DNA of 64,000 bases from IMGVR_UViG_3300032268_000986:278866-342865; one strand, 5' to 3'. Counted from the first letter of the stretch, positions 10,505 through 63,690 are shown. A program made the numbers and translations. The notes: generated from the sequence alone by a model not told the origin.

Positions 10505-10510
10505 TAAATA
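10504..10510 (+). promoter_or_regulatory. T4-type late promoter, leaderless
   Basis: CTAAATA, 5 nt, then ATG 10516; no SD. Confidence 0.65.
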
Positions 10511-10515
10511 TCCCT

Positions 10516-12756: not shown

Positions 12757-12783
12757 TAATAAAATTTTAAAATAGGAAATAGC

Positions 12784-14012: not shown

Positions 14013-14013
14013 T

Positions 14014-45486: not shown

Positions 45487-45896
45487 AAGCAGTTGGTGTT
45501 TGGTTTTATGCGGCCAGCACTGGTCGATATCTATACCTGTTGCGCAATGATCACAAACATCCTGGCGCCTGGGGCCTACCTGGGGGCAAACTTGAATCTG
45601 GTGAAACCTTGCTGGGTGGCATGGAACGTGAATGCACTGAAGAACTAGGCAGCTTTCCAGTGTATCAGCGACTGGTGCCTGTGGAGAAATTCACTGCTGG
45701 GGATTTTGAGTATCACACCTGGGTGTGTGTGGTCACTGGTGAATTTGTGCCTGTGCTAAATCACGAACACCTGGGGTATGCCTGGATCAATTCTAGTGTG
45801 TTTCCCAGGCCTATGCATCCGGGTCTTTGGAGCACAGTGAATCTCGAAGCTGTGCAAAGCAAGCTGCTCTTGATAGAGCAGGCATTGCAATTATAA
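45483..45896 (+). CDS. Nudix hydrolase
   Basis: Start revised to GTG 45483. Nudix box GLPGGKLESGETLLGGMERECTEELG; EH..YAW. Confidence 0.9.
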   Translation: MKAVGVWFYAASTGRYLYLLRNDHKHPGAWGLPGGKLESGETLLGGMERECTEELGSFPVYQRLVPVEKFTAGDFEYHTWVCVVTGEFVPVLNHEHLGYAWINSSVFPRPMHPGLWSTVNLEAVQSKLLLIEQALQL

Positions 45897-48800
45897 TCTA
45901 CCAACCACTATCTCAATAACACCCGATTCGCCGTTGAAGTTTTCCAGTGCTTTGCCAATAACTGTGCCCATGGCCGGTGTAGCACAGGCACATGCCGCAC
46001 CGTTACCAGCAGCGATCATCATGTCACCTTTGCGCACTGTGCCTGTGACCTTGGTAGGTACTCTTCCTGCTAGGGCCAGAGACACTGTGTACTCACTCTC
46101 TAGCATGGTGTTCATTAAATGAGCTGGATTAGTTGAAACCACACCGGCTACTCTAGCATCACCATACTGAGTTGACACAGTGACTTCGGCACTGCCACCA
46201 AACGACAGCACTGTGCCCGGAGTATACTCGGCATCTGCTGTGTACTTCTCTGCCAAGTCAGCATAACGAGCAGTTGTTGCAGTTGCAGTAATTATGTTAG
46301 CTGTGAAGTTTCCGCTTGCATCACGTGCAACAATTGCACTGGCTGTGTTGGCCGATGTTGCGGTAGAACCCAGGGTGACAGCACCAGTTGATACACTGGC
46401 TGTGATACCACCACCATTGGCCAGGCTCAGTACGCCTGTGTTGGTGATTGTAACGCCTGTGCTGCCGTTGTAGCTGGTGCCACCCAAACCTGTACCAATT
46501 GTCAATGTACCAGTTGCTGTAGCAGTGATAGTACCTGATCCACCCAGAGCAATTGCTGTGCCATTAACAGTCAAGCTGGCATTGGCCAATCTGGCTTGTG
46601 CTAATGTGCCACTTGAGATATTTGATGCATTGATTGTAGTGACATTGGCACCTGACCCGTTGAGTGTACCAAAGATGTTGCCACCAGTGATGTTGCCTGT
46701 GGCTGATATTAGGCCGGCTGTTAAAATGTTACCACCAGTGACGTTGCCACTTAGTGATGCTGTAGTACCTGTGTGTGTGGTGGCATTGACGTTGGCGCCA
46801 CCCAAGATGTTGCCACCAGTAATGTTGCCTGTGGCAGATATTAGACCACCTGTCAACAAGTTACCGCCAGTGATGTTGCCTGTGGCCGAAATTGTAGTGC
46901 TTGACGACACTGCACCAACCAATGGACCATAGAACGCTGCGGCAGTGATGTTACCCGACGCACTCATGCGTCCAATGTTCACATTACCTGTACCATTGGG
47001 TGTGAGTACAATGTTGGCGTTGGCAGCCGATGTTTGAATATCCAACTGAGCTGAGTCAACAATAGCACCTGACAACAATAGGTTTCCACCAGTGATGTTG
47101 CCAGTGCTCACAGTCAAACTGGTGCCAGTTATGGCAGCACCTGTGATGCCGCCAGCAGCTGAAATCAAGCCACCTGTGAGCAGGTTACCTGAAGTGGTAT
47201 TGCCTGTCACTGTGAGGCTGGTCAATGTACCCAATGATGTGATATTGGGCTGTGCTGCCGAGCTTACTGTGGCAGCATAGCCAGTGGTATTAACACTCAG
47301 TGTGCCGGTTACATTGGCTGCAGGTATTGATGTCAGTCCAGCACCTGATCCATTGAACTGCGATCCTGTGACTTGACCAGCTGCTGATATCAATCCTGCT
47401 GTGGTAATGTTGCCGCTCACAACGTTGCCACCAGCTGATATCAAACCTGTTGTATTGACGTTGCCCCCAACCACGTTGCCAGTGGCTGATACAAATGAAC
47501 TGGCTACTACTCTGGCAGTGTTAACGTTGCCAGCTGCAATATTGCCAGTTGCTGATACTGTGCCAGCAGTGCTCAAATTGCCTGTGATGGTATTGCCAGT
47601 CACACTCAAACTGGTCAGTGTGCCCACAGTCTGAAGACTTGAATTTACCACAGTGGCATTCAGGATAGATCCACTCAGTGTGCCTGCAGGTGCAACCACT
47701 GCCGCAGTAGATGCTGCTGTGAGCTGTCCTTGTTGGTTAACTGTAAACGTCGGGATAGCTGTGGAGTTGCCGTAGCTGCCGGCTGTGACCACTGTGTTGC
47801 TGATGCTGAACTGAGTGCCTGTCAGTGTGAGTCCAGTGCCAGCGGTGAAGGCACCCGAACCTGAGAATTGTGTCCAAACAACAGCACTTGTGCCCACTGT
47901 GGTAACTGGTTCCACCATGACCCAACCAGTGCTGTCATATTGTGTGCCTGCTGTGATAAACGTAAAGTCACCTCCAGCCATGGCAGTTGGAGTGTCAAAA
48001 TCTGTGGCACGAGTCAACACTGTTGTGCTTGTTCTTGTATAGATACCATTGTGTGCTGTGTTGGTTTCGTCTTTAATCAAGATACGCATGCCATTGCTCA
48101 GCGTCACACCGTCAATGGTGACATAACTGCCTGTGGTAGTCAGCGTGGCACCCACACCGCTGGTGCCATTGTTGTAGGTCACTGTGCCGCCAGAAATTGT
48201 GGCCAGTGTGGTCGTAGTTGCTGCGCTACATGAAGGTTGTATGTGCAATCCTTCAGCAACATTATCAACATAGGCCTTGGTGGCAGCATCTTGTGCTTGT
48301 ACAGGGTCACTGAGGTTGTTGATATATGTCTGAGTACTCAACACAATGTTGCCAGTGGCCGACAAATTGATGTTGCCGGTTGATCGTACTGTGGTTGCAG
48401 TACCAGTCACTGTGTTGGCAAAAACTCCACCCGCAGTGAGCAAGTTAGCGCCGGTGATGTTGCCTAACACACTCATGGCCTGTGATTCAGTGATAGTCAC
48501 TGCTATGGTAGGAGTGATAGCTCCGTTGGCAGTGGTTTGAATCACTGCATAGGTACCTCGAGCAGTGTCAGTTTGATCTTGTGCGGAGAAAAAGTCCAGT
48601 CTGCCAGTTGAGTTTGCACCAAATCCTTGTGATCCATTGCTGTAGCCACGGGCGGTGTACTGGGCTAATAGATCGCCGGCAACAGTTTGTGTTGGCGATG
48701 CTGCTGTACCACGAGCATGTCGTCCAGTGTAGGCAGTGTATACTCCTGTGCCATAGCTGTCTGTGGTAATTCGAGTAATATTAGCACTTTGGCCTGTGGC

Positions 48801-51800
48801 GTGAATTATGGTGCCCAGGGCATCAGCAATGCCTTGTGTAGCAGTTTGGGCAGACACCATGAGCAAGCTGTCAGGTACAGTGGCTGGACCAATGTTGACA
48901 TTGCCACCTGTGATGTTGCCTGTGGCACTCACTTGGCCAGCTGTATTGACATTTCCGCCAGTTATATTGCCTGAGACTGAAACTGTGGTGCCAGTCAAGT
49001 TACCAACCAAGGTACCAATGATGTTGCCACCAGTGACGTTGCCTGAAGCACTGACAGTGGTAGCTGACAACAATGTTGTTGATACGTTGCCACCAGTGAT
49101 GTTGCCTGTGGCCGAAATTGCGCCGCCAGTGGCCAAGTTAGCACCAGTAACGTTGCCGCCAGCGCTGACTTGACCAGCAGTGAGCACATTACCACCAGTA
49201 ACGTTGCCAGTGGATGTGATCAATCCAGTGGTAGTAAGATTGCCTGCTGTGGTGTTGCCGTAAAGAGTGATATTGGTCTGAGCACCTGATGTGATTGATC
49301 CTATGATCACATTGGTGTTGGAACCACTTGCTCCCAAGGTGCCAATGTCTATGGTCTTGACACTGCCCGAAGCAGTGACACCGTTGCCAATCACAATTGA
49401 TTGATTGGCTGTGCTACGACCTATGTTGATGGCGCCAGTCTGTGACGTGCCACCAATGGTAGTAGTACCTGTGGTTTGAGCATTACCTATACTGATAACA
49501 CCAGTGGTGGTGCTCATGGTCACGGTGCTGGTGGCTGTAAAAGTTCCACTCACTGAGGTGGTGCTTAGACTAGTAGTGCCGCCTATGGTAGCAGCGCCTA
49601 CAACATTCAATGCTGTCTGTACCACAGCATTGCCCTGTACATCAAGGTCTTTGTTTATAGAAACATAACCATCAAAATAGTTGCTGCCTCCTGTGGCTCT
49701 CAGGCCCTCGCCACGTGTGTCTATCTCTAGCACAGTGTCTGAACCTGATCCCACTATCCAGCATCGATTTTGAGTAAATTCCAAAAACATGCCGGTGGGG
49801 GTTGATTCAACAAATCCATACCAAAAACTGTGGTTGACAAAAGTGGCTGTGGTAAGATCATAGGGTGTGCCAAGATTGTATTGATTAATAGCATCGTTGG
49901 TTGATCCCAACATGTAGAATCTAGTGCCGTTGTTGTTGAACTGTATTGCTGCTGGTGCAGTGTCTTGTGTTGCCAGACTCACAAAGGTACTAAACGTGGC
50001 AGTGGCTATGTTGCCAGCTGATGAAAGATTATAGACATCAACCCCATCACCACTTGAGCCAGAAATAAACATCTGTGTGAGATCAGGCTTGAACGTGATA
50101 CCTGTGGGTGTTGACTCTTCAGCAACCACTGAAAACTCCTGCACAAACGTTAGTGTGTTGGCTTGCCAAGCGGTGCCAAAATTATATTCACGCACTGCAT
50201 CATTGCCTGATCCCACGATATAACACTTGGTACCATCTGAAGAAATGTATAGATCAGTTGGGGAAGTGTCGCTAAGATTTGGGGATACTCCTACATTAGA
50301 TGCCGTAGTGATGTTCCATGCTGTTGACAAGTTATATTCAGTGATATCATCACCTGAGGTGCCAACAATGTACATCTTGGTGCCATCGGGCTTGAAAAAT
50401 ATGCCAGTTGCTGCTGTCTCGTCCGCGGCCACACTGAAACTGTTGCCAGTCAAATACCAACCCGTGATGTCATTGCTGTTTTGCAGTACTGAATTTGCTT
50501 GCGTGCCTAATAAGATTACATTGTTGGCCGACACATTGCCTGTGGTACTGAGATTACCAGTGACGTTGCCAATTACATTACCAATGAAGTTTGCCGCAGT
50601 GACATTGCCAGCGGCTGAGATCAATCCACCAGTTAGTATGTTGCCACCGGTGACGTTGCCACTTGCACTCACAGTAACACCCTGTACCAAGGCAGCAGAT
50701 ATCAAATTGCCACCAGTGACGTTTCCTGTTGCTGAGACCAAACCTGCTGTGGTGACATTGCCACCTATGACGTTACCTGAAGCACTGACAGTGGTAGCTG
50801 ACAACAATGTGGTAGATACATTACCGCCAGTGATGTTGCCTGTGGCTGATACAATGCCACCTGTGAGTAGATTACCGCCGGTGACGTTACCAATTGCGCT
50901 AGCAGTACCACCAGTGATATTGCCACTTGTGACCAAATTGCCACCTGTGACGTTGCCGGCTGCTGATACCAATCCGTTTGAAAATATGTTGCTGCCAGTG
51001 ATGTTGCCTGTGGCAACCACATTACCCGATGACAACAAATTGCCAGCACTGACGTTGGCAGTAGCTGACACTTGCCCAGCTGTGGCAATGTTACCACCTG
51101 TAATATTGCCAGTGGCCAAAACTTGGCCAGCTGTGTTGATGTTGCCACCTGCCACATTGCCTGTCACGGCCAATGCGTTGCTGGTTTTATCAAAAGTAAA
51201 TGCGGCGCTACCGTTTAGAACATCAGCATCGTTGAATTGAACCTGTGTGTTAGATCCAGCTGCATCAACATTGCCAACAAACGTGCCAATAAAGTTAGCA
51301 GCAGTGATGTTGCCAGTACCGCTAACTTGGCCGCTGCCAAAAAGAATGTTGCCACCAGTGATATTGCCTGTGGTTGTTACTTGCCCAGTAGTGACAATGT
51401 TGCCACCAGTGATGTTGCCTGAAGCTGTAACTTGGCCGGCAGTGGCCACATTGCCACCAGTGACATTTCCGGTTGCCACAACTGTTCCAAGGGAACCAAT
51501 ATTTCCAGCAGTGATGTTGCCTGTAACTACTGCAACGCCTGAAGTGATCAGATTGCCACCAACTACGTTTCCAGTTGCAGTAATTAGACCACCAGTTAGT
51601 ATGTTACCACCAGTGATGTTACCAGTCAGCGATGCTACCGCAGCTTCTACTGTGCCAGCAACAAAAGTACCAAAATTGGCCACTGTGACTACTTCGTTGG
51701 CTATTGCCACGTCAACCGCTGCAAACATTTTGCCAGCACTGTCGTCATATCCAAAAAATGCACTTTTTTCTACGTTGCCAGCTGTGTCAAAATACCACAA

Positions 51801-52571
51801 CTGTGTGCCACGATCCTTGTTGTCATCTGAAGTCAGTGGTGTGTTGTTGGGCCCGTGACCCATGCTGATTATGGGATCTTCTACAGCCAGGGTAGAAACG
51901 TTGATGTAGCTGATATTGCCATTGACATAAAGATCACCGTTGACTGTGGCGTCACCTGTTACTGACAAAGTACCAATAGTTCCTGTTCCTGATACCAAAA
52001 GACCACCAGCATTAACGTTGGATGTGGCAACTACGTTTCCAGTAACGCTGGCTCCTGTGCTAGTGACCACCAATACATTGCTGGAGCCAGCCACTGTGAC
52101 ATAGGCATTGCCATTCACACCCGAAATGCCAATAGTTGTGGTACCTTGGGTGATTGAACTTACATCAATATTGCCCACATCAATGTTGGCCTGAGTGACA
52201 CCATCACTGGTATACACTGCAAACGTGTTGCCAGCTATTTCTTTCAACTGCAAGTTGCCCAAGTAAATGGTATTACCACCCACATACAAACTGCTCCAGG
52301 CCTGATTGGCTGATCCCAAATTGTAAGTGAGATTGGCAGATGGTACTAGGTTGCCAATAACATTGCCAGTCACGGTGACGCCGTTCAATGTTTTGTTGCT
52401 CAGTGTTTGAGTTTGTGTGAGACCCACAGTGGCAAATCCGCCTGCTACGGCACCGTCATGCACACGCAAGGTGTTGTTGGTTGTATCAACCGTGATTTCG
52501 GCCAACGCACCGGTAAAAGCGTTGTTTTCTGATGTTGTACCGCGTCGGTATTGTACTTGTGTTGATGCCAT
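45891..52571 (-). CDS. Giant tail fibre (2226 aa): Mtd_N-like N-terminus, GN(V/I)TGGN repeats, internal propeller-like repeats, C-terminal Peptidase_G2-like intramolecular chaperone
   Basis: QYRRGT...FTGA..EITVDT...LRVHDG; QDAATKAYVD; NGIY..TRATDFD; YADLAE...VALAGRVP.KV...KGD...IGKAL. Confidence 0.85.
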   Translation of the reverse strand: MASTQVQYRRGTTSENNAFTGALAEITVDTTNNTLRVHDGAVAGGFATVGLTQTQTLSNKTLNGVTVTGNVIGNLVPSANLTYNLGSANQAWSSLYVGGNTIYLGNLQLKEIAGNTFAVYTSDGVTQANIDVGNIDVSSITQGTTTIGISGVNGNAYVTVAGSSNVLVVTSTGASVTGNVVATSNVNAGGLLVSGTGTIGTLSVTGDATVNGDLYVNGNISYINVSTLAVEDPIISMGHGPNNTPLTSDDNKDRGTQLWYFDTAGNVEKSAFFGYDDSAGKMFAAVDVAIANEVVTVANFGTFVAGTVEAAVASLTGNITGGNILTGGLITATGNVVGGNLITSGVAVVTGNITAGNIGSLGTVVATGNVTGGNVATAGQVTASGNITGGNIVTTGQVTTTGNITGGNILFGSGQVSGTGNITAANFIGTFVGNVDAAGSNTQVQFNDADVLNGSAAFTFDKTSNALAVTGNVAGGNINTAGQVLATGNITGGNIATAGQVSATANVSAGNLLSSGNVVATGNITGSNIFSNGLVSAAGNVTGGNLVTSGNITGGTASAIGNVTGGNLLTGGIVSATGNITGGNVSTTLLSATTVSASGNVIGGNVTTAGLVSATGNVTGGNLISAALVQGVTVSASGNVTGGNILTGGLISAAGNVTAANFIGNVIGNVTGNLSTTGNVSANNVILLGTQANSVLQNSNDITGWYLTGNSFSVAADETAATGIFFKPDGTKMYIVGTSGDDITEYNLSTAWNITTASNVGVSPNLSDTSPTDLYISSDGTKCYIVGSGNDAVREYNFGTAWQANTLTFVQEFSVVAEESTPTGITFKPDLTQMFISGSSGDGVDVYNLSSAGNIATATFSTFVSLATQDTAPAAIQFNNNGTRFYMLGSTNDAINQYNLGTPYDLTTATFVNHSFWYGFVESTPTGMFLEFTQNRCWIVGSGSDTVLEIDTRGEGLRATGGSNYFDGYVSINKDLDVQGNAVVQTALNVVGAATIGGTTSLSTTSVSGTFTATSTVTMSTTTGVISIGNAQTTGTTTIGGTSQTGAINIGRSTANQSIVIGNGVTASGSVKTIDIGTLGASGSNTNVIIGSITSGAQTNITLYGNTTAGNLTTTGLITSTGNVTGGNVLTAGQVSAGGNVTGANLATGGAISATGNITGGNVSTTLLSATTVSASGNVTGGNIIGTLVGNLTGTTVSVSGNITGGNVNTAGQVSATGNITGGNVNIGPATVPDSLLMVSAQTATQGIADALGTIIHATGQSANITRITTDSYGTGVYTAYTGRHARGTAASPTQTVAGDLLAQYTARGYSNGSQGFGANSTGRLDFFSAQDQTDTARGTYAVIQTTANGAITPTIAVTITESQAMSVLGNITGANLLTAGGVFANTVTGTATTVRSTGNINLSATGNIVLSTQTYINNLSDPVQAQDAATKAYVDNVAEGLHIQPSCSAATTTTLATISGGTVTYNNGTSGVGATLTTTGSYVTIDGVTLSNGMRILIKDETNTAHNGIYTRTSTTVLTRATDFDTPTAMAGGDFTFITAGTQYDSTGWVMVEPVTTVGTSAVVWTQFSGSGAFTAGTGLTLTGTQFSISNTVVTAGSYGNSTAIPTFTVNQQGQLTAASTAAVVAPAGTLSGSILNATVVNSSLQTVGTLTSLSVTGNTITGNLSTAGTVSATGNIAAGNVNTARVVASSFVSATGNVVGGNVNTTGLISAGGNVVSGNITTAGLISAAGQVTGSQFNGSGAGLTSIPAANVTGTLSVNTTGYAATVSSAAQPNITSLGTLTSLTVTGNTTSGNLLTGGLISAAGGITGAAITGTSLTVSTGNITGGNLLLSGAIVDSAQLDIQTSAANANIVLTPNGTGNVNIGRMSASGNITAAAFYGPLVGAVSSSTTISATGNITGGNLLTGGLISATGNITGGNILGGANVNATTHTGTTASLSGNVTGGNILTAGLISATGNITGGNIFGTLNGSGANVTTINASNISSGTLAQARLANASLTVNGTAIALGGSGTITATATGTLTIGTGLGGTSYNGSTGVTITNTGVLSLANGGGITASVSTGAVTLGSTATSANTASAIVARDASGNFTANIITATATTARYADLAEKYTADAEYTPGTVLSFGGSAEVTVSTQYGDARVAGVVSTNPAHLMNTMLESEYTVSLALAGRVPTKVTGTVRKGDMMIAAGNGAACACATPAMGTVIGKALENFNGESGVIEIVVGRL

Positions 52572-52590
52572 GGTTTATCCTATGCCATAT

Positions 52591-53325: not shown

Positions 53326-53334
53326 TTGTTACTG

Positions 53335-55842: not shown

Positions 55843-55854
55843 ATTTTTACCTTT

Positions 55855-57066
55855 TTAAAACGTTCCGCCATCAATCTGCTGGTCGTCGTTTGTCATTTTT
55901 ATCCATGGGGTCCAGGCCGCCGCCCAATAATTTCTTGTAAATTCAATTTTTACATTTTCAAAATTATCAATTGTGCCTGGATAGAATGTTTGGGAAACAG
56001 CTACATTTCCTGCTACTGCACTGTTCTTGACTTCAAGCAAGCCCACATACACCAAACTGTCCAGAGGAGGGCCAGTTACACCACCCCAATTTGTTCTATT
56101 TACCGTATAAGTGCCCATTTGCAGCAGCACATCCCAATTTGATGTATCTCCACCACGGTTGACCATGGTCTCAGTAAGGCCTGTGCCTGAGCCCACAAAG
56201 CTGCCGCCGGAAACCACATTTCCAACCACAGTCACACTGTTGGCAGTTTTATTAAAGGTAAATCCTGCAGATGCTGTGGCTACACCACTGTCGTTAAACA
56301 CAACCCCAGTGTTGGCTCCAGATATAGAAATATTGCCAGAGATGTTGCCCACAAATGTGTTGGCGGTGACAACGTTGGCGGTGACATTGCCCGTAACGTC
56401 AATTGATCCAACGACTGTTAATCCTTGCTCAACATTTAACCCGTCTGCTATGTTGACAAAACTTGAATCATCAGACTTGATGTCGTTGGTCACAATCTGA
56501 GGTGCTGTGACTGTGCCACTTACGTCAAGTCCTAGGGTAGTGAACTCAGCAACATTGACTGAATTAACTTCAACAAATATGTTGCCGTTGTTTGATGGGA
56601 TTGATACACTGCTGTTGCCGTTGTTAATGGAAGATCCGCCCGAAACCACAACTCCGGTCAAGGCACGACCATTACCAACAAAGTACCCCGAAGTTGTGAT
56701 ATTGCCCGGGGCATAGATTTCACCGCGAGATTCAATATCATTGGCTACAACATCTCCATAAATGTTGAGACTAGAGTTGATGATGCCAGAAATTGCCAAG
56801 TTGCCACTGATGTTTGCATTGCCTGTTGCAATGTTTGCTGTGGAAACATTGCCAGAAAAACTTGCATTTCCAGCAGTGACGTTGCCACTGGCACTGAGCG
56901 TGGTAAAACTGGCTGCTGCCGGGGCGGTGTTGCCAATGACTATGCCGTTGATGGCACCTTGTGGTTGCAGGCGCCAGGCTTGACCAGTCCAGATCCATGA
57001 CTTACCAGCAAAGGTGTAAATATCACCTGATGTTGGGTTCGTTGGAAAATTTAAAGTTAATGCCAT
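55855..57066 (-). CDS. Fibre-like protein (403 aa)
   Basis: LNFPTNPT.G..YT..GKSW.W.G..W N-terminus, GN repeats, C-terminal gp12/pyocin-knob-like segment (QTFY...WTPW), ends IDGGTF; leaderless late promoter at 57073-57079. Confidence 0.75.
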   Translation of the reverse strand: MALTLNFPTNPTSGDIYTFAGKSWIWTGQAWRLQPQGAINGIVIGNTAPAAASFTTLSASGNVTAGNASFSGNVSTANIATGNANISGNLAISGIINSSLNIYGDVVANDIESRGEIYAPGNITTSGYFVGNGRALTGVVVSGGSSINNGNSSVSIPSNNGNIFVEVNSVNVAEFTTLGLDVSGTVTAPQIVTNDIKSDDSSFVNIADGLNVEQGLTVVGSIDVTGNVTANVVTANTFVGNISGNISISGANTGVVFNDSGVATASAGFTFNKTANSVTVVGNVVSGGSFVGSGTGLTETMVNRGGDTSNWDVLLQMGTYTVNRTNWGGVTGPPLDSLVYVGLLEVKNSAVAGNVAVSQTFYPGTIDNFENVKIEFTRNYWAAAWTPWIKMTNDDQQIDGGTF

Positions 57067-57085
57067 AGTGAATATTTAGTGAAAA

Positions 57086-57784
57086 TCATGCTGGTGTAAT
57101 TGTTGCCAGGCCATTGGTGTTTCTCCACACCGATGTTGGTGTAGATCCCGTGGCCACATAAATGGTCCAGTTGTCAGTGCTGACCACTACTCGACCAAGC
57201 ACTTTTCCAATGGTATTGACTGTGGCAGCAGCATTGCCAATCATGACGTTGGTTGAGGTGTCTAGAACAGAGGCAGATGCTGGAGAACTAAAACTTTGAT
57301 AAGCCTCCATTTCTGCCCACTGATTGCTTGTGTTGTCATTGAAATAGATGTACTGCACACCAGTGTCACTTTCAATCCAGACATCACCAATGTTGGCTGG
57401 GTTTGGGGCAAACTGGCTGAATGTGACCTGGCTGCCACCGCCACCACCTGAAATACCAGTTAGAAATGCGCCATTACCATAGAAGTATTGAGCACGTACA
57501 CTACCAAACAGCTTGTCTGGAGTACCAAGATCATACACCCCGCTGATGCCTGGATTTATAGTGCTGTTGACTTGAATATTGCCAATGCCATTGGCCTGCA
57601 ATATCAGTTCATTGTTGTAACCCCGGACTGTGATTGTGTTGTTGGCAATGACAACATTGCTGTCCACTGGTCCTGATGACCAAATTGCCGTGAAGTTGTT
57701 GTTTACTGCATCAAATGCAGCACGTAGAGATTCGCCTGTGCCGTCATTGGCCACTAGGCCTGTGTTGATTATTTGTTGAGTCAT
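57086..57784 (-). CDS. Fibre/baseplate-attachment protein
   Basis: QQIINTGLVANDGTGESLR.AF..VN.NF motif typical of T4-like baseplate/fibre proteins; P.P..GDVW.ESDTG. Confidence 0.7.
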   Translation of the reverse strand: MTQQIINTGLVANDGTGESLRAAFDAVNNNFTAIWSSGPVDSNVVIANNTITVRGYNNELILQANGIGNIQVNSTINPGISGVYDLGTPDKLFGSVRAQYFYGNGAFLTGISGGGGGSQVTFSQFAPNPANIGDVWIESDTGVQYIYFNDNTSNQWAEMEAYQSFSSPASASVLDTSTNVMIGNAAATVNTIGKVLGRVVVSTDNWTIYVATGSTPTSVWRNTNGLATITPA

Positions 57785-57793
57785 GAAGTCTCT

Positions 57794-57820
57794 GGGTCCT
57801 TGGTATATTTACCAGAACCC
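57794..57820 (-). promoter_or_regulatory. Late promoter GTAAATA in a hairpin that sequesters the SD
   Basis: Minus strand GGGTTC-TGGTA-AATA-TACCA-A-GGACCC; the AAGGA SD is in the 3' arm. Confidence 0.6.
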
Positions 57821-57826
57821 AAAGGC

Positions 57827-60793
57827 TTATGCTCGACCCACAACTACTTCAATTACACCAGTTGAACCTGAAAAATTAGCCAGTGCTTTGCCAATAATGG
57901 TTCCTGGAAGAGGATTTGATTCTGCTCGAGCCAGTCCATGACCAGCAGACACCAACAAATCACCTTTGGTAACAGGGCCTTGAATCTTGCAGGGTACTCG
58001 ACCTGCCAGAGCTACAATTGCCACATGCTCGGCTTGCAGCATTGAATTCATAACAAAACTGGGTTTTTCTGAAATCACCCCGGCTACTCGATGATCACTG
58101 TCGATTGCAGAAACTGTGACTTCTTCTGCGCCGCCAAAAACTACAACAGTACCTGTTTCGTACCGAGCATCTGATGCATATAATTCTGCCAAGTCAGCGT
58201 ATTGTGCCGATGTTGCCTTGGCAAATATGGTGTTGAAGTACAGTGAAGAACTACCAATGTTGCCTACGCCATTGCCGTTGCTGTTGACAATGTTGCCCGC
58301 TGTAATTGTACCAGTGCCGACACTGAGGTTACCACCAGTGATATTGCCCGTGACACTTATTGTGGTACCAGTTAGATTACCAACCAAGGTACCAATGATG
58401 TTGCCACCAGTGATGTTGCCTGTAACACTGACAGTGGTACCTGTGTGAGTTGTAGCATTGACGTTGGCACCACCCAGAATATTACCACCCGTGATGTTGC
58501 CTGTAACACTGACAGTGGTACCTGTGTGAGTTGTAGCATTGACGTTGGCACCACCCAGAATATTACCACCCGTGATGTTGCCTGTGACACTGACAGTTGT
58601 ACCTGTGTGTGTAGTGGCATTGACGTTGGCACCACCTAGTATGTTACCACCAGTGATGTTGCCTGTAACACTGACAGTGGTACCTGTGTGAGTTGTAGCA
58701 TTGACGTTGGCACCACCTAGAATATTACCACCAGTGATGTTACCAGTAACGCTTACTGTGGTACCAGTTAGGTTACCAACATGAGTACCAATGATGTTAC
58801 CACCAGTGATGTTGCCCAATGCACTGATTGTTCCTGTACTGCCAATTATAGTGGCATTGGCAGTTACAATATTACCACCTGTGATGTTGCCTGTGGCTGA
58901 TATCAAGCCACCAGTTAAGATATTGCCACCTGTGATGTTGCCACTTAGCGATGCTGTTGTGCCAGTATGTGTGGTGGCATTGACATTTGCGCCACCCAGA
59001 ATATTACCACCTGTGATGTTGCCCAATACACTGATTGTTCCTGTACTGCCAATTATTGTGGCATTAGCAGTAACCAAGTTACCACCGGTGACGTTACCTG
59101 ATGCACTTACAGTGGTTGCTGATACGTTGCCTACCAAAGGACCATAGAACGCTGCTGCGGTAATGTTTCCGCTGGCACTGACACGTCCAATGTTGACATT
59201 ACCGGTGCCATTGGGTGTGAGCACAATATTGGCATTAGCTGCTGTGGTTTGTATGTCCAGTTGTGCTGAGTCAAGAATAGCTCCTGAAATCAGCAAGTTG
59301 CCGCCAGTGACGTTGCCCGTGACTGATACTGCGGTCAACGTACCAACTGATGTGATGTTGGGCTGAGCGTTTGTTGTGACTGTGCCAGCTGTGGTTGCTG
59401 ACGTTGCTGACGTAGCCGTTGTAGCCGATGTAGCACTTGCTACAGCACCAGTGACGTTGCCCCCAGGAATAGAAGTTAGTCCTGACCCTGACCCAAAGAA
59501 ATTTGCCGCAGTAATATTTCCAGCTGCACTTACTAATCCAGCTGTGGTCACATTGCCAGCAATGACATTGCCTGTGACTGAGTTAAGTCCAGTTACTGTG
59601 ACACCCACATTGGATATTACCATTACATTAGATGTACCAGCAACAGCGGCAGTGATGTTGCCGTTGGTTTGAGAAACTGCCAATAGTGTAGTACCATTGG
59701 CAATTTGAGTAACAGCCACGTTACTGGTTGCTGTTACGTTGGATAAGAATCCGCCATCACCCACAAAGTATTTGCCGGCTTGAACTGTGACGTTACCAGT
59801 TGACGATACTGCACCGGTAGACACTGTGCCTAGAGTGGTGATATTTCCACCAGTTACTGTGCCTGTGGCCGATACTGCACCGGTAGTAAAGACATTGCCA
59901 GCATTGATATCTGAATTTGCTGTTACATAAGCTGCAATTAGATTTCCATTTATGTTTAACGCAGTGCCAGTGTAATTTGTAGCTGATACGTTGCCGCCAG
60001 TGATGTTGCCTGTGGCTGATATTAGGCCAGCTGTCAATATATTGCCACCTGTGACGTTGCCACTTAATGACGCAGTTGTGCCTGTATGTGTAGTGGCGTT
60101 GACATTGGCACCACCCAAGATGTTGCCACCAGTGATGTTGCCAGTAGCTGAGATCAACCCACTTGTGATTAAATTACCACCTGTGATGTTGCCGCTAAGT
60201 GATGCAGTTGTACCTGTGTGTGTGGTGGCATTGACGTTTGCGCCGCCCAGAATGTTGCCACCAGTGATGTTGCCTGTGGCTGAGATCAATCCAGCAGTGA
60301 TGACGTTGCCACCAGTGACGTTGCCACCAGCACTTACTTGGCCACCTGTTCTTAAATTACCACCTGTGACGTTGCCACTCAGTGATGCTGTGGTACCTGT
60401 ATGGGTAGTTGCATTGACGTTGGCACCACCTAGAATATTGCCACCCGTGATGTTGCCAGTGGCACTGACAACTCCGCCTGTTCTTAAATTACCACCTGTA
60501 ACGTTGCCTGTGGCACTGATTAATCCTGTGACATATTCTCCAGTAGTGGCCCAGACCACCACATTTCCCGTTCCACCAATTCCCACTGTGATATTGCCGT
60601 CAGCGGTGCCCACGTTGACGTTGCTGGTACCGTTGAAAATTCGAGTAACACTGATGTTACCAGCAATACTGGTGTTGCCTGAAATTGACAGGTCGCCGGT
60701 AACGACCACTGTGGTGGATTGCAAGGTAATTGTGTTACCTGCTCCTAGAGTTTGAATAGTGTAATTGCCGGCGACACGTTTGGCGGTTGTCAT
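57827..60793 (-). CDS. Tail fibre (988 aa) of GN(I/V)TGGN repeats with Peptidase_G2-like C-terminal chaperone
   Basis: Repeats throughout; YADLAELYASDARY..GTVV.FGG..EVT...RVAGV...VALAGRVPCK; late promoter at 60811-60817. Confidence 0.85.
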   Translation of the reverse strand: MTTAKRVAGNYTIQTLGAGNTITLQSTTVVVTGDLSISGNTSIAGNISVTRIFNGTSNVNVGTADGNITVGIGGTGNVVVWATTGEYVTGLISATGNVTGGNLRTGGVVSATGNITGGNILGGANVNATTHTGTTASLSGNVTGGNLRTGGQVSAGGNVTGGNVITAGLISATGNITGGNILGGANVNATTHTGTTASLSGNITGGNLITSGLISATGNITGGNILGGANVNATTHTGTTASLSGNVTGGNILTAGLISATGNITGGNVSATNYTGTALNINGNLIAAYVTANSDINAGNVFTTGAVSATGTVTGGNITTLGTVSTGAVSSTGNVTVQAGKYFVGDGGFLSNVTATSNVAVTQIANGTTLLAVSQTNGNITAAVAGTSNVMVISNVGVTVTGLNSVTGNVIAGNVTTAGLVSAAGNITAANFFGSGSGLTSIPGGNVTGAVASATSATTATSATSATTAGTVTTNAQPNITSVGTLTAVSVTGNVTGGNLLISGAILDSAQLDIQTTAANANIVLTPNGTGNVNIGRVSASGNITAAAFYGPLVGNVSATTVSASGNVTGGNLVTANATIIGSTGTISVLGNITGGNILGGANVNATTHTGTTASLSGNITGGNILTGGLISATGNITGGNIVTANATIIGSTGTISALGNITGGNIIGTHVGNLTGTTVSVTGNITGGNILGGANVNATTHTGTTVSVTGNITGGNILGGANVNATTHTGTTVSVTGNITGGNILGGANVNATTHTGTTVSVTGNITGGNILGGANVNATTHTGTTVSVTGNITGGNIIGTLVGNLTGTTISVTGNITGGNLSVGTGTITAGNIVNSNGNGVGNIGSSSLYFNTIFAKATSAQYADLAELYASDARYETGTVVVFGGAEEVTVSAIDSDHRVAGVISEKPSFVMNSMLQAEHVAIVALAGRVPCKIQGPVTKGDLLVSAGHGLARAESNPLPGTIIGKALANFSGSTGVIEVVVGRA
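58410..58733 (-). repeat. Four tandem 81-bp (27-aa) coding repeats
   Basis: Units start at 58410, 58491, 58572 and 58653; the first two are identical. Peptide GNITGGNILGGANVNATTHTGTTVSVT. Confidence 0.9.
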
Positions 60794-61381
60794 TTAGAGT
60801 TCCTTTGTGTTATTTATTCGGTTTAGGAAGTCTTCCATTTGCATATTGGCCAGGTTTTTTATCTTTTGAAGTTCGGGTATGTTGGCAGTGGTGGGGCCAA
60901 ACACACGAAAGAAGTTGGTATTGGAAAAATCTCCAGCAACAGTTTTTATCTGTCGCGCCCAGTTGCCAGTGTATGTGGGAACATCTGCGCTTTTTTTGTA
61001 AAATTCAGTGTCAGCGTAACAGTTGTTGAATTTGCCAGTGACCGTGGGTCCCATGTCAAATCCCAACAGGTACACTGCTCGATTGCCGGCCAAGGCTGCC
61101 AGAGCCACTGCAATTGGCCCTGAACTGAATCCGTAATACTGCTGTGGCACTGGTTTTGCTGCCAAGTGAGGCAGAGGTTTTCTGGTGTAAAACTCATGTT
61201 GTTTTGGATAACCTGAGTGTTGTATCTGTTCGCTGATGGGACGGTCTGTGCTGACCAAGACATCAGGTGCAAACTCTCGGTACAAGGCATTGCAGCCGTA
61301 CACCGGCCCCAGCCCTTGCAGCGTGGCTAGATTAACTGCTTGACGACTCACGCCGTTGCCCAAAACAAATGCTCTACTCAT
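60794..61381 (-). CDS. Maf (MAF_flag10/DUF115)/CstII-like glycosyltransferase domain protein
   Basis: AFVLGNG.S, VYGCNA.Y....PD.L...D, SSG..A..LA...G...VYLLGFD. Confidence 0.6.
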   Translation of the reverse strand: MSRAFVLGNGVSRQAVNLATLQGLGPVYGCNALYREFAPDVLVSTDRPISEQIQHSGYPKQHEFYTRKPLPHLAAKPVPQQYYGFSSGPIAVALAALAGNRAVYLLGFDMGPTVTGKFNNCYADTEFYKKSADVPTYTGNWARQIKTVAGDFSNTNFFRVFGPTTANIPELQKIKNLANMQMEDFLNRINNTKEL

Positions 61382-61386
61382 AGAAA

Positions 61387-61413
61387 ATCCTCTCTGTATG
61401 TACCAGAGAGGAT
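61387..61413 (-). promoter_or_regulatory. 10-bp hairpin sequestering the SD, with a late-promoter-like loop (GTACATA)
   Basis: Minus strand ATCCTCTCTG-GTACATA-CAGAGAGGAT-TTTCT-ATG. Confidence 0.65.
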
Positions 61414-61430
61414 CTCAGGGCTAAATCAAA

Positions 61431-62252
61431 TTAGCTGGTGACTTTGTCAACTTGCGCCAATTGCAAGCTGCCGTTTTGAGCTTCAGCACCTGCAATGATT
61501 TCAGCGCCAGACCATGTGACTGTGCCTTCATCAGTGAAGAAGTTAACAGGGTAGAAGTTTTCGCTGCTTTGTACATTGGTACCAAGATTGCTGTCACTGT
61601 AGTTGCCGTAAGTCATGCCATTCCAGTCACGTACCCACTTGTTGGTGATGTAACTGGCGTACACAGCAGAACTGTCGCCTACTGAATAAGCGATACTCAT
61701 GAAACCAGCAGCAGGAGTGGCGGTGTTTGACAACACGCATTGTCCAACAGGATATGCTGTGCCTGTACCAGCACCCACTGCTGTGGCTGTGAATACATCA
61801 CCCAATGCATAATCTACGCCGGCACCGCAAGCTGCCCAGTCAGTTGTTCCAACTGAGGCAATTTGATATGCTTGACCCACAATCAACGATTCATCTGCAG
61901 TGGTGGCAGCAGTGTAAGCCACCAAGAACTTGTGCGAACCTTTTTGTCTGATAATGCGACCAGCTCCTGCAGTTGTGTTGGTACCATCTGCCAAACTGAT
62001 GTTGACCACAGCAGCAATTTCTGGAAATGTTGGTGTTGGAGTCGAAGTTGCTGGAGAACCACCCACCACGCCCAGAAAATCTGTGGCGCTGAGTGTGTTG
62101 GCACTGTTGTAAACTGGATTGGTCAAGCTACCAAAGTTGGGGTAACCTGCATCAGTAAGAACGGTTTGATTGTATGTGGTCACTGGTGGTGTGCCACTAA
62201 CGACGGTTCCAGAACCAACGTTGTTTTTTTGAATTTTGAGAGCTCTTCCCAT
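61431..62252 (-). CDS. Late, probably virion structural, protein
   Basis: 273 aa, Gly/Ala/Thr-rich, IIRQKGSHKFLV motif, AAGGAG SD, late promoter at 62337-62343. Confidence 0.7.
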   Translation of the reverse strand: MGRALKIQKNNVGSGTVVSGTPPVTTYNQTVLTDAGYPNFGSLTNPVYNSANTLSATDFLGVVGGSPATSTPTPTFPEIAAVVNISLADGTNTTAGAGRIIRQKGSHKFLVAYTAATTADESLIVGQAYQIASVGTTDWAACGAGVDYALGDVFTATAVGAGTGTAYPVGQCVLSNTATPAAGFMSIAYSVGDSSAVYASYITNKWVRDWNGMTYGNYSDSNLGTNVQSSENFYPVNFFTDEGTVTWSGAEIIAGAEAQNGSLQLAQVDKVTS

Positions 62253-62257
62253 TTGAT

Positions 62258-62336
62258 TTCTCCTTATAGAAGCCCAATGCGGGTTCTAGCCGCTACGCAG
62301 TGGTGAGCTGCATAAGTCGCCCTATTGCGACAAGTG
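62258..62336 (-). ncRNA. Candidate structured 5' leader RNA (three hairpins)
   Basis: GTCGC/GCGAC, TATGCAG/CTGCGTA and TAGAA-CCC/GGG-C-TTCTA stems between the late promoter and the SD. Confidence 0.4.
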
Positions 62337-62392
62337 TATTTAGTTTGTTCAACAAATTTAAGCCGCTAGTCCGGGTTGTTGTAAATATCTGC

Positions 62393-63541
62393 ATGGACAT
62401 CAACTACCTCATCGACCAAGGCAATCAGCATCGGTCAAAACATGAACCTGAACAAGCACTGCATTGTTACGCCATGGCATTTGTAAGTGATCGCAATTCT
62501 GCTGCGGCCTTCAACAACTATGGAAATGTACTGAGAGAAATAGGCGAGCCTAGACGTGCTGTACCATTCTTACAAAACGCAATTGAACTTGATCCCAACA
62601 ACGTCACAGCTAGATTCAATCTAGCTGTGGCATACTTGCTCATGGGAGACTATGAAAAAGGCTGGCCAGCATACGAAACTCGTTGGCAGTATGAACATCT
62701 TGCCGGAACTGAGCCGCAGTTCTCTCAGCCTAGATGGCGTGGCGAGGATCTCAAGGGAAAAACCGTACTGGTTGTAGGCGAACAAGGCCACGGTGACAAT
62801 ATTCAGTTTGTGAGATTTGTATATAACCTTCATGTCATGGGTGCCAGAATCAAACTGCAAGTAACAGATGGGTTGATACCTCTGTTGAGCAACAGCGCCA
62901 TTATTGAGCAAGTGGGCAGCTACGTTGATGACATGGGAGAATTTGATTACTGGGTTCCCATCATGAGTCTACCGGGAATACTGGGTGTAACTCTTGACCG
63001 ATTGACTAGCACAGTGAGTTATCTTAATGCGCCAGACACAGTGTCTCAAGAATGGGTTCAACGACTGGGTGCCAAAACACGCATGAGAGTGGGCATTAGC
63101 TGGAGTGGTCGTAGAGACTCCTGGTTGAATCAACACAAATCAGTTCCGTTTCCAGTGGTGTTAGAAATGATTCGCAACAATCCGCAGTACGAATGGATCA
63201 ACCTGCAAGCAGATGCCAGCGATGATGAAGTTGTTGCATTGCAAGATGCCGGGGTGACCATGTTTCCCGGAGCTGTCAACAGCTTCCTGGACACAGCCGG
63301 ACTCATGTCACATTTGGATGTGGTAATTGGCGTTGATACCGCAGTGAGTCACTTGGCCGGAGCACTGGGTCGCTCGACCTGGATCATGCTCAACAACTAT
63401 GCCACAGACTGGCGTTGGTTACTGAATCGCGACAGTTCACCCTGGTACGGCACTGTGCGACTGTTCCGTCAACCTGCCATGGGAGATTGGACAAGTGTAA
63501 CCAAAAAGGTCAGCCAGTATCTCTCGTGGTTCAAAGTATAA
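62393..63541 (+). CDS. TPR-repeat + GT-B (GT9-like) glycosyltransferase
   Basis: Start revised to 62393 (GTAAATA at 62381-62387, then 5 nt). TPRs (AAFNNYGNVL, ARFNLA..YLL.G), EQG.GD.IQF.RF, VGISWSG, NLQ, F.DTA.L...LD.VI.VDTAV.HLAGALG, DWRW...SPWY. Confidence 0.88.
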   Translation: MDINYLIDQGNQHRSKHEPEQALHCYAMAFVSDRNSAAAFNNYGNVLREIGEPRRAVPFLQNAIELDPNNVTARFNLAVAYLLMGDYEKGWPAYETRWQYEHLAGTEPQFSQPRWRGEDLKGKTVLVVGEQGHGDNIQFVRFVYNLHVMGARIKLQVTDGLIPLLSNSAIIEQVGSYVDDMGEFDYWVPIMSLPGILGVTLDRLTSTVSYLNAPDTVSQEWVQRLGAKTRMRVGISWSGRRDSWLNQHKSVPFPVVLEMIRNNPQYEWINLQADASDDEVVALQDAGVTMFPGAVNSFLDTAGLMSHLDVVIGVDTAVSHLAGALGRSTWIMLNNYATDWRWLLNRDSSPWYGTVRLFRQPAMGDWTSVTKKVSQYLSWFKV

Positions 63542-63687: not shown

Positions 63688-63690
63688 ATT

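What the first reader, a model, noticed from the sequence alone, without database searches (positions are those of the whole stretch)
45891..63541. Candidate virion-fibre glycosylation system: sequon-rich fibres next to two late protein-glycosyltransferase-like genes
Seen: six consecutive fibre genes, most built from GN(V/I)TGGN-type repeats, so that N-X-T/S triplets recur throughout, along with abundant Ser/Thr. Directly upstream is a Maf/CstII-like gene (60794-61381), and one gene further a TPR + GT-B gene (62393-63541). Each has a late-promoter-like element. Established: Maf proteins attach nonulosonic acids to flagellin, HMW1C-type cytoplasmic enzymes N-glycosylate N-X-S/T in beta-helical adhesins, and AAH/TibC heptosylate autotransporter repeats. 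Inference: the phage decorates its own fibres with sugars during assembly, giving a glycocalyx-like coat for adhesion, protease shielding or mimicry of host glycans.
Basis: partly seen in the sequence, partly recalled or inferred. Interest (0 to 1): 0.85.

Follow-up and report, generated by a model that had tools for sequence, protein, structure and literature searches.

The report
Late glycosyltransferase genes beside phage fibres

Summary
The genes are real and the family calls mostly hold. E1 (60794-61381, -) is a 195-aa member of the sialyltransferase GT42 / DUF115-MptE-like class. E2 (62393-63541, +) is TPR repeats plus a GT9-like GT-B domain. Six fibre-like genes follow, but only three carry multiple GN(V/I)TGGN repeats. 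N-X-S/T exceeds composition only in F1 and F6.

New points:
- The conserved unit in about 50 related metagenomic loci is E2 (divergent), X (an unknown 273-aa protein with a strong ribosome-binding site and a covarying terminator), E1, then the first fibre.
- E1 has no promoter of its own. Its stop abuts the fibre's ATG, and its 3' end carries that fibre's TAAATA promoter.
- Distant E1 homologues lacking E2 and X still sit directly upstream of a protein with F6's N-terminal module.
- Relatives that keep E1, E2 and X have T-x-T-G-G-N repeats with no sequons, which argues against N-glycosylation.
- A second conserved glyco cluster (8.9-17.4 kb) holds four more GT-like genes, two methyltransferases and an HldE-type nucleotidyltransferase. 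At least two of its operons have the same TAAATA element.

Best reading: late O-glycosylation of virion surface proteins, with the first fibre and/or X as targets. Every step from enzyme to substrate is inferred. It would be a new variant of known phage virion glycosylation.

The parts
62393..63541 (+). E2: 382-aa protein with TPR repeats (about residues 1-100) and a GT9-like GT-B glycosyltransferase domain (about 110-382)
   Evidence: Pfam gives TPR families at 1e-11 and Glyco_transf_9 at 3.9e-5. NCBIfam gives weak heptosyltransferase I/III hits. Invariant GEQGHGD and VDT..SHLAGALG motifs are present. A marginal WaaC alignment falls at the latter motif. The AF2 model has pLDDT 68, and its Foldseek top hits are the TPR+GT-B enzymes SPINDLY and OGT.
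62382..62387 (+). TAAATA late-promoter-like element, 5 nt before the E2 ATG
   Evidence: It is present within 8 nt of the ATG in 32 of 38 distinct related loci.
62337..62342 (-). TAAATA element about 90 nt upstream of X. It probably drives both X and, by read-through, E1.
   Evidence: It is present 90-99 nt upstream of X in 53 of 53 loci, followed by a conserved AAGGAG ribosome-binding site.
61431..62252 (-). X: 273-aa protein rich in T, A and G, of unknown fold. It always lies between E2 and E1 and is probably an abundant late (structural) protein.
   Evidence: No Pfam, PHROG, NCBIfam, PDB or phage tblastn hit. It is syntenic in every locus that carries E2. The alignment has conserved ends and variable patches.
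61384..61416 (-). Hairpin plus T-run between the X stop and the E1 ATG. It looks like an intrinsic terminator or attenuator, and its 3' arm holds E1's ribosome-binding site.
   Evidence: RNAfold gives -19.7 kcal/mol. It is conserved in 14 of 14 loci with compensatory arm changes such as CCTCTCTG/CAGAGAGG, CCTCCCAG/CTGGGAGG and CCCCACAG/CTGTGGGG.
60794..61381 (-). E1: 195-aa minimal member of the sialyltransferase GT42 / DUF115-MptE-like class
   Evidence: Invariant residues are G8 N9 G10 R13 C30 N31 G88 G107 D109.
60811..60816 (-). TAAATA element inside the last codons of E1, 17 nt upstream of the F6 ATG
   Evidence: A TAAATA lies in the last 45 nt of E1 in 67 of 83 loci.
57827..60793 (-). F6: first fibre, 988 aa. 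Its ATG directly follows the E1 stop. Its N-terminal 'MxTxKR.xG(D/N)YxI' module is the conserved partner of E1. It has 22 GN(V/I)TGGN cores.
57086..57784 (-). F5: 232-aa fibre or baseplate-connector-like protein with no GN cores
   Evidence: PHROG tail fibre and baseplate wedge connector hits.
55855..57066 (-). F4: 403-aa fibre-like protein with one GN core
   Evidence: Composition and N-terminus; no family hit.
53335..55842 (-). F3: 835-aa fibre-like protein with 6 GN cores
52591..53325 (-). F2: 244-aa fibre-like protein with one GN core
   Evidence: PHROG long tail fibre N-terminal hits.
45891..52571 (-). F1: 2226-aa fibre with an Mtd_N N-terminus, 25 GN cores and the same C-terminal domain as F6
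16616..17380 (-). Nucleotidyltransferase (HldE-type heptose-1-phosphate adenylyltransferase-like) fused to a ManC-type cupin. TGTAAATA lies 5 nt before its ATG.
   Evidence: Pfam CTP_transf_like 4.9e-13 and MannoseP_isomer 1.5e-20. phrog_7878 at 1e-29. Start and promoter. Conserved at 75-100% identity in the 80 best of 408 matching IMG/VR stretches.
8952..16619 (.). Second glyco-gene cluster. It holds a GT (8952-9689, -), a GT2-like gene (10516-11316, +, TAAATA 5 nt upstream), an FkbM methyltransferase (11854-12756, +), a SAM methyltransferase (12784-13314, +), a GT25 (13311-14012, +), a GT8 (15930-16619, -) and four unknown ORFs.
   Evidence: The cluster is conserved in 15 related loci, except that GT25 and the SAM methyltransferase are missing there.

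Best explanation
The window comes from a freshwater jumbo myovirus of about 343 kb that carries a conserved, late-expressed glycosylation toolkit.

E2 is a TPR-guided GT9-like (GT-B) transferase. E1 is a minimal GT42/DUF115-class transferase. They most likely O-glycosylate virion surface protein(s) in the cytoplasm before assembly.

The TPR domain of E2 would dock the protein substrate, as in FlmG and OGT. E1 is made in small amounts. It is transcribed only by read-through of the terminator after X, and its ribosome-binding site is buried in that hairpin. It acts on the product of the gene it abuts, which is the first fibre (F6) or its N-terminal module. X, the abundant protein between the two enzymes, is the other candidate substrate.

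The glyco cluster at 8.9-17.4 kb would supply the donor and extend the glycan. It holds an HldE-like nucleotidyltransferase, GT8, GT2-like and GT25 genes, a further GT and two methyltransferases.

Shown: the enzyme-class assignments, conservation, synteny, the promoter and terminator elements, and the E1-to-fibre-module gene pairing. Inferred: that the enzymes are active, that the acceptor is a protein, which protein it is, which sugars are used, and any biological role such as adhesion, shielding or mimicry. The link is not to N-X-S/T sequons.
For: Enzyme class:
- E1 class.
- E2 architecture and motifs.
- Both enzymes are highly conserved at 55-95% identity, while the first fibre's N-terminus diverges far more (mean p-distance 0.67 against 0.37-0.39).

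Timing:
- TAAATA lies upstream of sheath, tube and fibre genes and of E2, X, the nucleotidyltransferase and the GT2-like operon.

Synteny and pairing:
- Head genes, E2, X, E1, then fibres in all clade members with enough flank.
- The E1 stop is directly followed by the next ATG in 49 of 83 loci.
- Distant E1 homologues (44-55% identity, no E2 or X) are still followed by a 200-230-aa protein with F6's N-terminal module.
- In the reverse search, about 11 of 15 full-length members of that family have E1 directly upstream. Only 5 of 56 generic fibre matches do, and in the four checked E1 is not adjacent.

Other support:
- Unrelated phages place TPR-GT9 homologues beside a capsid gene together with FkbM and a galT-like gene, or among fibre genes.
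- E2's TPR half co-diverges with the fibre N-terminus once the GT half is controlled for (partial Mantel 0.29, p 5e-4), and the converse is not seen. This is suggestive only.
- Phage virion glycosylation by phage-encoded GTs has a precedent in mycobacteriophages (Freeman et al. 2023, as cited in PMC12619734).
Against: - No glycan has been observed on any protein.
- E1 has no invariant His matching the CstII catalytic His188. Its Foldseek TM-scores to solved GTs are low (0.35-0.46).
- The GT N-lobe of the E2 model is of low confidence, and the GT9 sequence signal is marginal.
- E1 homologues in pelagiphages lie among replication genes, away from fibres.
- E1 and E2 are not an obligate pair.
- About 4 of 15 members of the partner family lack E1.
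- The co-divergence signal could reflect physical linkage and shared ancestry.
- X, not the fibres, is the invariant neighbour of both enzymes within the clade.
Confidence: 0.45

Rival explanations
1. The enzymes glycosylate X or a head protein, not the fibres. X would be an abundant surface (decoration-type) protein, and E2 and E1 flank it because it is their substrate.
For: - X lies between E2 and E1 in every clade locus.
- It has a conserved late promoter, a consensus ribosome-binding site and a covarying terminator, all typical of a very abundant late protein.
- It has conserved ends and variable surface-like patches. Its identity to the window's X swings between about 40% and 97% across loci while E1 and E2 stay at about 55-95%.
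- The module sits directly after the major capsid gene.
- X co-diverges with the GT half of E2 (partial 0.34).
- In podovirus MW202512 the E2 homologue lies two genes after the capsid gene.
Against: - Distant E1 loci keep the fibre-module neighbour but have no X.
- X has no recognisable fold or family, so its presence in the virion is itself an inference.
Confidence: 0.2
2. The enzymes act on host envelope glycans or host proteins, such as the LPS core, capsule or flagellin, late in infection. This could block superinfection or stop progeny from sticking to debris.
For: - GT9, GT25 and GT8 are classic LPS-core families, and HldE-type enzymes make the LPS-core donor ADP-heptose.
- Cellular TPR-GT9 homologues exist in Proteobacteria.
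- Serotype conversion by phage GTs is well known (general knowledge, also stated in PMC12619734).
Against: - E1 and E2 lack predicted membrane segments, by reading of the sequences and models.
- The TPR domain argues for a protein partner.
- Their fixed position inside the structural module and E1's stop-start coupling to a fibre gene are unexpected for host-directed enzymes.
Confidence: 0.12
3. E1 is not a glycosyltransferase. It would be another nucleotide-dependent enzyme of the MptE-like fold, such as a kinase or pyrophosphokinase, or a fibre assembly factor. Only E2 and the 8.9-17.4 kb cluster would then handle sugars.
For: - The second-best structural hit is archaeal MptE HPPK.
- No invariant His equivalent to the CstII base is present.
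- E1 is very small (195 aa) and lacks the lid and membrane regions of CstII.
- Fibre genes often have dedicated adjacent assembly factors (general knowledge).
Against: - Profile hits go specifically to GT42 sialyltransferases through both nucleotide-sugar-binding motifs.
- PHROG and Pfam hits of family members are to sialyltransferase/CST-I and DUF115.
- Invariant polar residues (N9, R13, N31, D109, and near-invariant N119/N120/Y122/Y128) look catalytic rather than chaperone-like.
Confidence: 0.12
4. The glycosyltransferases decorate phage DNA (hypermodified bases) rather than proteins.
For: Phage-encoded GT-A and GT-B enzymes glycosylate hydroxymethylated bases (Pyle et al. 2024, cited in PMC12619734). 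The window also holds three radical-SAM genes of unknown role.
Against: - These genes have late-type promoters shared with structural genes.
- E2 has a TPR protein-interaction domain.
- They lie in the structural module.
- No base-hydroxymethylase gene was found among the window ORFs scanned.
Confidence: 0.05

Closest known systems
TibC / AAH bacterial autotransporter heptosyltransferases (BAHT, GT9)
   Same: Both have a GT9-type GT-B catalytic domain with the GD and DT..HLA donor-site motifs. Both are cytoplasmic enzymes proposed to O-glycosylate a repetitive beta-solenoid-like surface fibre. ADP-heptose is the likely donor, and the phage encodes an HldE-like enzyme.
   Different: E2 has an N-terminal TPR domain and a single Cys, so it has no four-Cys iron finger. 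Similarity to GT9 is marginal (Pfam 3.9e-5; PDB E 0.9). No dodecamer evidence exists. The substrate is unproven.
FlmG flagellin O-glycosyltransferase of Caulobacter (TPR + GT-B; PMC7591256)
   Same: Both have an N-terminal TPR domain followed by a C-terminal GT-B domain. In FlmG the TPR domain binds the filament protein substrate. Both would modify a filamentous surface protein in the cytoplasm before assembly.
   Different: FlmG is 596 aa with a much longer TPR region and transfers pseudaminic acid. Homology of the GT domains could not be tested because no FlmG sequence was available to the tools. The Caulobacteraceae homologues found (31-35% identity) are 759-aa proteins of unknown function.
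Cst-I / Cst-II / Pasteurella GT42 sialyltransferases and Maf (DUF115, PF01973) flagellin nonulosonic-acid transferases
   Same: E1 shares the N-terminal GNGxS...CNxxY motif and the SG..A.A...G..IYL.G.D motif. It also shares the variant Rossmann fold.
   Different: E1 is only 195 aa and has no lid or membrane-association region. It has no invariant His at the CstII His188 position. The window protein gets no direct Pfam hit. The donor is unknown (CMP-Kdo or a nonulosonate would be guesses).
Mycobacteriophage virion glycosylation (Freeman et al. 2023) and chlorovirus capsid glycosylation
   Same: Virus-encoded glycosyltransferases lie in or near structural modules and are proposed or shown to decorate virion proteins.
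   Different: The enzyme families and host type differ (probably Gram-negative here). Here the enzymes pair with a fibre gene and an unknown protein X, not with capsid or tail-tube C-termini. There is no experimental evidence here.
OGT / SPINDLY (GT41)
   Same: Overall TPR + GT-B architecture. These are the best whole-model Foldseek matches (E 7e-10).
   Different: TM-scores are about 0.3, driven largely by the TPR part and a low-confidence model. Sequence motifs point to GT9, not GT41. No HMW1C-type features were seen.

Membership tests
GT42 sialyltransferases (Cst-I/Cst-II) | N-terminal nucleotide-binding GNGxS motif followed by CN..Y | tested here: met
   G8-N9-G10-x-S12 and C30-N31 are invariant or near-invariant in 61 homologues. 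They align to the same motif in 9c08, 2p2v and 1ro7.
GT42 sialyltransferases (Cst-I/Cst-II) | Central SG...A.A...G..IYL.G.D motif (CMP-sugar site) | tested here: met
   S87-G88, A91 and G107-x-D109 are conserved and aligned.
GT42 sialyltransferases (Cst-I/Cst-II) | Catalytic general base His (His188 in Cst-II, from my own knowledge of the Cst-II structure papers) | tested here: not met
   No His is invariant or near-invariant in A1. In the HMM alignment the region opposite His188 is poorly aligned. The result is inconclusive for catalysis, but the feature is not conserved.
GT42 sialyltransferases (Cst-I/Cst-II) | Significant whole-protein match to the family model | tested here: inconclusive
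   The window protein has no Pfam hit. Two of 61 homologues hit PF06002 and three of 61 hit PF01973. The profile-to-PDB search gives E 1e-8. Foldseek gives E 1e-4 with TM 0.43.
Maf / DUF115 (PF01973, MptE-like) | Match to PF01973 and a flagellin-binding multidomain architecture (about 600 aa or more) | tested here: not met
   Only 3 of 61 homologues reach PF01973 at E 4e-4 or weaker. E1 is a single 195-aa domain. BFVD hits include DUF115/MptE-like viral proteins at TM about 0.5.
GT9 heptosyltransferases | Pfam PF01075 above gathering score | tested here: met
   23.5 bits against a cut-off of 22, over only 28 residues. Most clade homologues carry PF01075 in the precomputed annotation.
GT9 heptosyltransferases | N-lobe G-D catalytic motif and C-lobe D-T-x-x-x-H-L-A donor motif (WaaC D13 and D261/T262/H266, from my own knowledge) | tested here: met
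   G134-D135, D315, T316 and H320 are invariant or nearly so in A2. The alignment to WaaC at this motif is marginal (E 0.9).
BAHT (TibC/AAH) protein heptosyltransferases | Four-Cys iron-finger and dodecameric assembly | tested here: not met
   E2 has a single Cys, at residue 25. Oligomeric state cannot be tested with these tools.
GT41 (OGT / SPY / HMW1C) | Sequence match of the catalytic domain to GT41 | tested here: not met
   PDB sequence hits to OGT and SPY cover only the TPR residues 20-103. The GT domain alone has no PDB sequence hit. The structural match is of low TM, from a low-confidence model.
FlmG-class flagellin glycosyltransferases | TPR N-domain that binds the substrate, plus a GT-B C-domain | tested here: inconclusive
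   The architecture is met. Substrate binding and homology to FlmG could not be tested with these tools.
Phage virion glycosylation systems | Glycan detected on a virion protein that depends on the phage GT | not testable with these tools
   This requires mass spectrometry or glycostaining.
N-X-S/T-directed cytoplasmic N-glycosylation | Sequons conserved wherever the enzymes are kept | tested here: not met
   L053/L054 keep E1, E2 and X, but their repeat cores are T-[VIL]-T-G-G-N in 13 of 14 cases. Sequon density there is 1.2 per 100 aa (z -2.0). L039 is mixed.

The most novel reading that the evidence does not exclude
The phage taps its host's LPS inner-core donor pools. E2 would act as a TPR-guided protein heptosyltransferase, fed by the phage's own HldE-like enzyme. 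E1 would act as a fibre-dedicated ulosonic-acid (Kdo or nonulosonate) transferase. The GT8, GT25 and GT2-like enzymes and the methyltransferases would extend the glycan, so that the first fibre and/or X carries an LPS-core-like, methylated oligosaccharide. This would be the first virion glycosylation system in a phage of Gram-negative bacteria. The E1-fibre-module pair would be a widespread two-gene cassette across uncultured aquatic phages.
Probability: 0.12. Interest if true: 0.85.

Novelty: new variant of a known kind. Interest (0 to 1): 0.55.

Why it matters
Virion glycosylation by phage-encoded enzymes has so far been shown in mycobacteriophages, and in giant algal viruses. A conserved late toolkit in an abundant freshwater jumbo-phage clade, with thousands of metagenomic homologues, would extend it to very different phages and enzyme families.

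It would also give testable enzyme-substrate pairs. One is a 195-aa minimal sialyltransferase-class enzyme coupled to a defined fibre module. The other is a compact TPR-GT9 enzyme. Both are of interest for protein glyco-engineering and for understanding how fibres resist proteases or recognise hosts.

If it is wrong, the locus still documents a conserved attenuator-controlled operon, and a gene pair (E1 plus the fibre N-module) that needs an explanation.

Tried and rejected
- A near-identity DNA search of 60500-64000 against phage genomes found nothing relevant.
- Single-sequence PDB searches of E1 and of the E2 GT domain gave nothing. The full E2 gave TPR hits only.
- tblastn of a repeat-rich F6 segment against phages gave no match, probably because of low-complexity masking (a first attempt had wrong coordinates). 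The comparison with GN-repeat fibres of phages lacking these enzymes therefore could not be made.
- X had no hit in Pfam, PHROGs, NCBIfam, the phage tblastn search or the PDB profile search.
- The E2 model was only partly confident (pLDDT 68), so its Foldseek ranking is weak evidence.
- The canonical T4 late promoter TATAAATA is at chance level and was replaced by TAAATA.
- The Freeman et al. paper is not held and is cited second-hand. A literature search for glycosylated tail fibres found nothing relevant. The 'moraphage' jumbo-phage paper mentions glycosyltransferases only in general terms.
- Read-through of the E1 stop into F6 was considered. The two ORFs are in frame only because they abut, all three stop codons occur at this junction in relatives, and no read-through product was translated or searched.

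Full report
CONTEXT
The window belongs to a T4-like jumbo myovirus.
- The 1091-aa tail sheath is about 45% identical to those of Atu_ph07, Phosso and PA5oct. Terminase, tube and baseplate-type genes lie upstream.
- Fifteen window proteins are 100% identical to a 342,865-bp IMG/VR contig (L088).
- No cultured phage is close at the DNA level.
- Homologues of the genes studied come overwhelmingly from freshwater-lake metagenomes.

THE OBSERVATION
Six minus-strand fibre-like ORFs (F1 to F6) fill 45891-60793.
- Strict GN(V/I)TGGN cores number 25, 1, 6, 1, 0 and 22 in F1 to F6.
- N-X-S/T exceeds composition-preserving shuffles only in F1 (z 4.7) and F6 (z 5.9), entirely through that motif. F2 to F5 sit at the level expected from their N/T/S-rich composition.

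E1 (60794-61381)
- E1 has no Pfam hit itself, but it hits a PHROG annotated as alpha-2,3-sialyltransferase.
- A 61-member alignment built from an all-against-library search (959 clusters at 50% identity) matches solved GT42 sialyltransferases at E 1e-8 to 5e-7 through two nucleotide-sugar-site motifs.
- A few members reach PF01973 or PF06002.
- The AF2 model is confident (pLDDT 94.7). Its best PDB neighbours are a Pasteurella sialyltransferase, archaeal MptE and human ST6GALNAC2, at low TM-scores.
- BFVD neighbours include DUF115/MptE-like viral proteins.
- No conserved His matches the CstII base.

E2 (62393-63541)
- E2 is TPR plus a GT9-like domain with invariant GD and DT..HLA motifs.
- The model is mediocre (pLDDT 68) and resembles TPR+GT-B enzymes only in overall architecture.
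- E2 has one Cys, so it has no TibC-type iron finger.

REGULATION
- The T4 octamer TATAAATA is at chance level. TAAATA, in contrast, lies in the 50 nt upstream of 15 of 57 genes, against about 0.8 expected. These include the sheath, tube and F1, F4, F5 and F6 genes.
- E2 has TAAATA 5 nt before its ATG, and this holds in 32 of 38 relatives.
- X has it 90-99 nt upstream in 53 of 53 loci, plus a consensus ribosome-binding site.
- E1 has none. Between the X stop and the E1 ATG lies a hairpin plus T-run. It is conserved in 14 of 14 loci with compensatory changes, and its 3' arm contains E1's ribosome-binding site.
- E1 is therefore probably made at low level, by read-through from X.
- The last codons of E1 carry the TAAATA for the next gene in 67 of 83 loci. 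The E1 stop is directly followed by that gene's ATG in 49 of 83 loci, and all three stop codons are used.

SYNTENY
- In all clade loci with enough flank the order is portal, protease, scaffold, major capsid protein, a 418-aa A/P/E-rich protein, E2 (opposite strand), X, E1, then fibres.
- The fibres downstream differ widely in number, length and repeat content.
- E1 homologues at 40-50% identity lack E2 and X nearby. Those at 44-55% identity are mostly still followed by a 200-230-aa protein whose N-terminus (MxTxKR.xGDYxI...) is the same module as the F6 N-terminus.
- Searching from that protein family back, about 11 of 15 full-length members have E1 immediately upstream. Only 5 of 56 generic fibre matches have E1 in the locus, and in the four checked it is not adjacent.
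- Pelagiphage E1 homologues are an exception: they lie among replication genes.
- E2 homologues in unrelated phages lie beside a capsid gene together with FkbM and a galT-like gene, or among fibre genes.
- Cellular homologues keep the TPR+GT9 architecture. One lies beside chaperone-usher pilus genes.

SEQUONS
- In most relatives 50-85% of x-[VIL]-x-GGN cores are N-x-T/S.
- L053/L054 keep E1, E2 and X, yet 13 of 14 of their cores are T-x-T. Sequon density there is below the composition expectation.
- Together with the enzyme classes, which are not GT41, this argues against HMW1C-style N-glycosylation. O-linkage remains open.

A LARGER TOOLKIT
The region 8.9-17.4 kb encodes:
- a PHROG glycosyltransferase, a GT2-like protein, an FkbM and a second methyltransferase, a GT25 and a GT8;
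- a nucleotidyltransferase-cupin protein that matches the HldE heptose-1-phosphate adenylyltransferase PHROG at 1e-29.

Two of its operons start with the same TAAATA plus 5 nt plus ATG arrangement as E2. The cluster is conserved in 15 relatives, except GT25 and one methyltransferase. An ADP-heptose-type enzyme alongside a GT9-like transferase is a coherent pair, but the donor is inferred.

CO-DIVERGENCE
Across 37 non-redundant loci, the first fibre's N-terminus tracks E2's TPR half once the GT half is controlled for (0.29, p 5e-4). The converse is not seen (0.02). X tracks the GT half (0.34). Linkage and shared descent can produce such patterns, so this is only a hint.

VERDICT
- The general idea, that the phage glycosylates its own surface proteins late in infection, is the best-supported reading (about 0.45).
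- The target is more likely the first fibre's conserved module and/or X than the six fibres as a set.
- The sequon argument is not supported.
- Rivals are X or the capsid as sole target, host-envelope modification, a non-GT role for E1, and DNA modification.
- This is a new variant of a known kind, namely phage virion glycosylation. It is interesting but entirely genomic.

Noticed in passing
It holds four GT-like genes, two methyltransferases, an HldE-type nucleotidyltransferase fused to a cupin, and four unknown ORFs. GT25 and the SAM methyltransferase are specific to this phage among 15 relatives.
   Followed up: partly
window, e.g. 10505-10518, 17378-17391, 62382-62395, 32547-32557, 26996-27006: About eight late-type genes have TAAATA only 4-7 nt before the ATG and no ribosome-binding site, which suggests leaderless late mRNAs. 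Another nine have a 16-26-nt gap that holds a ribosome-binding site.
   Followed up: partly
window 3689-4747, 19143-20741, 25854-26996 (all minus strand): Three radical-SAM genes. Two of them lie next to the terminase and structural genes, and one has a TAAATA element. Their function is unknown.
   Followed up: no
window 62253-62342 (minus strand): X has a conserved 5' leader of about 85 nt between its TAAATA element and its ribosome-binding site in all 53 loci examined. It was not folded or analysed.
   Followed up: no
window 50227-51240, 51247-51858, 59991-60755 (plus strand): Long ORFs antisense to F1 and F6 encode LPPV-type repeats. They are mirror images of the GN-repeat codons, not genes.
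   Followed up: no
window 45891-46300 and 57827-58250; also F1 and F6 internal segments: F1 and F6 share near-identical internal stretches and the same C-terminal domain (phrog_22593; ...YADLAE...). The domain is reminiscent of a fibre C-terminal chaperone or cleavage domain, and the sharing suggests recombination between fibre genes.
   Followed up: no
L168 (NZ_JBBAKG010000003.1, 148 kb): A contig binned into a Haliscomenobacter MAG encodes an E2 homologue at 69% identity. It is probably a related phage contig. It could be a host hint or a binning artefact.
   Followed up: no
L181 3186-9506: In a Caulobacteraceae MAG, a 759-aa TPR-GT9 homologue lies beside an SCPU-domain pilin-like gene and an outer-membrane usher. 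This is a possible cellular analogue of fibre glycosylation.
   Followed up: no
L086 (MW202512) 4814-10041: An unrelated 44-kb podovirus from a freshwater spring has the order capsid gene, two small ORFs, TPR-GT9 homologue, endonuclease, FkbM methyltransferase, galT-like gene. The enzyme mix matches this window's.
   Followed up: no
L004 (HTVC008M) 1306-6900: The pelagiphage E1 homologue (gp007, 267 aa) sits among 2OG-Fe(II) oxygenases and a Nol-like carbamoyltransferase next to replication genes, which is a different context from this clade.
   Followed up: no
one search hits P0250, P0292, P0333, P0365: Some E1-family members are 300-435 aa, with the E1 domain fused to extra N- or C-terminal regions of unknown nature.
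   Followed up: no
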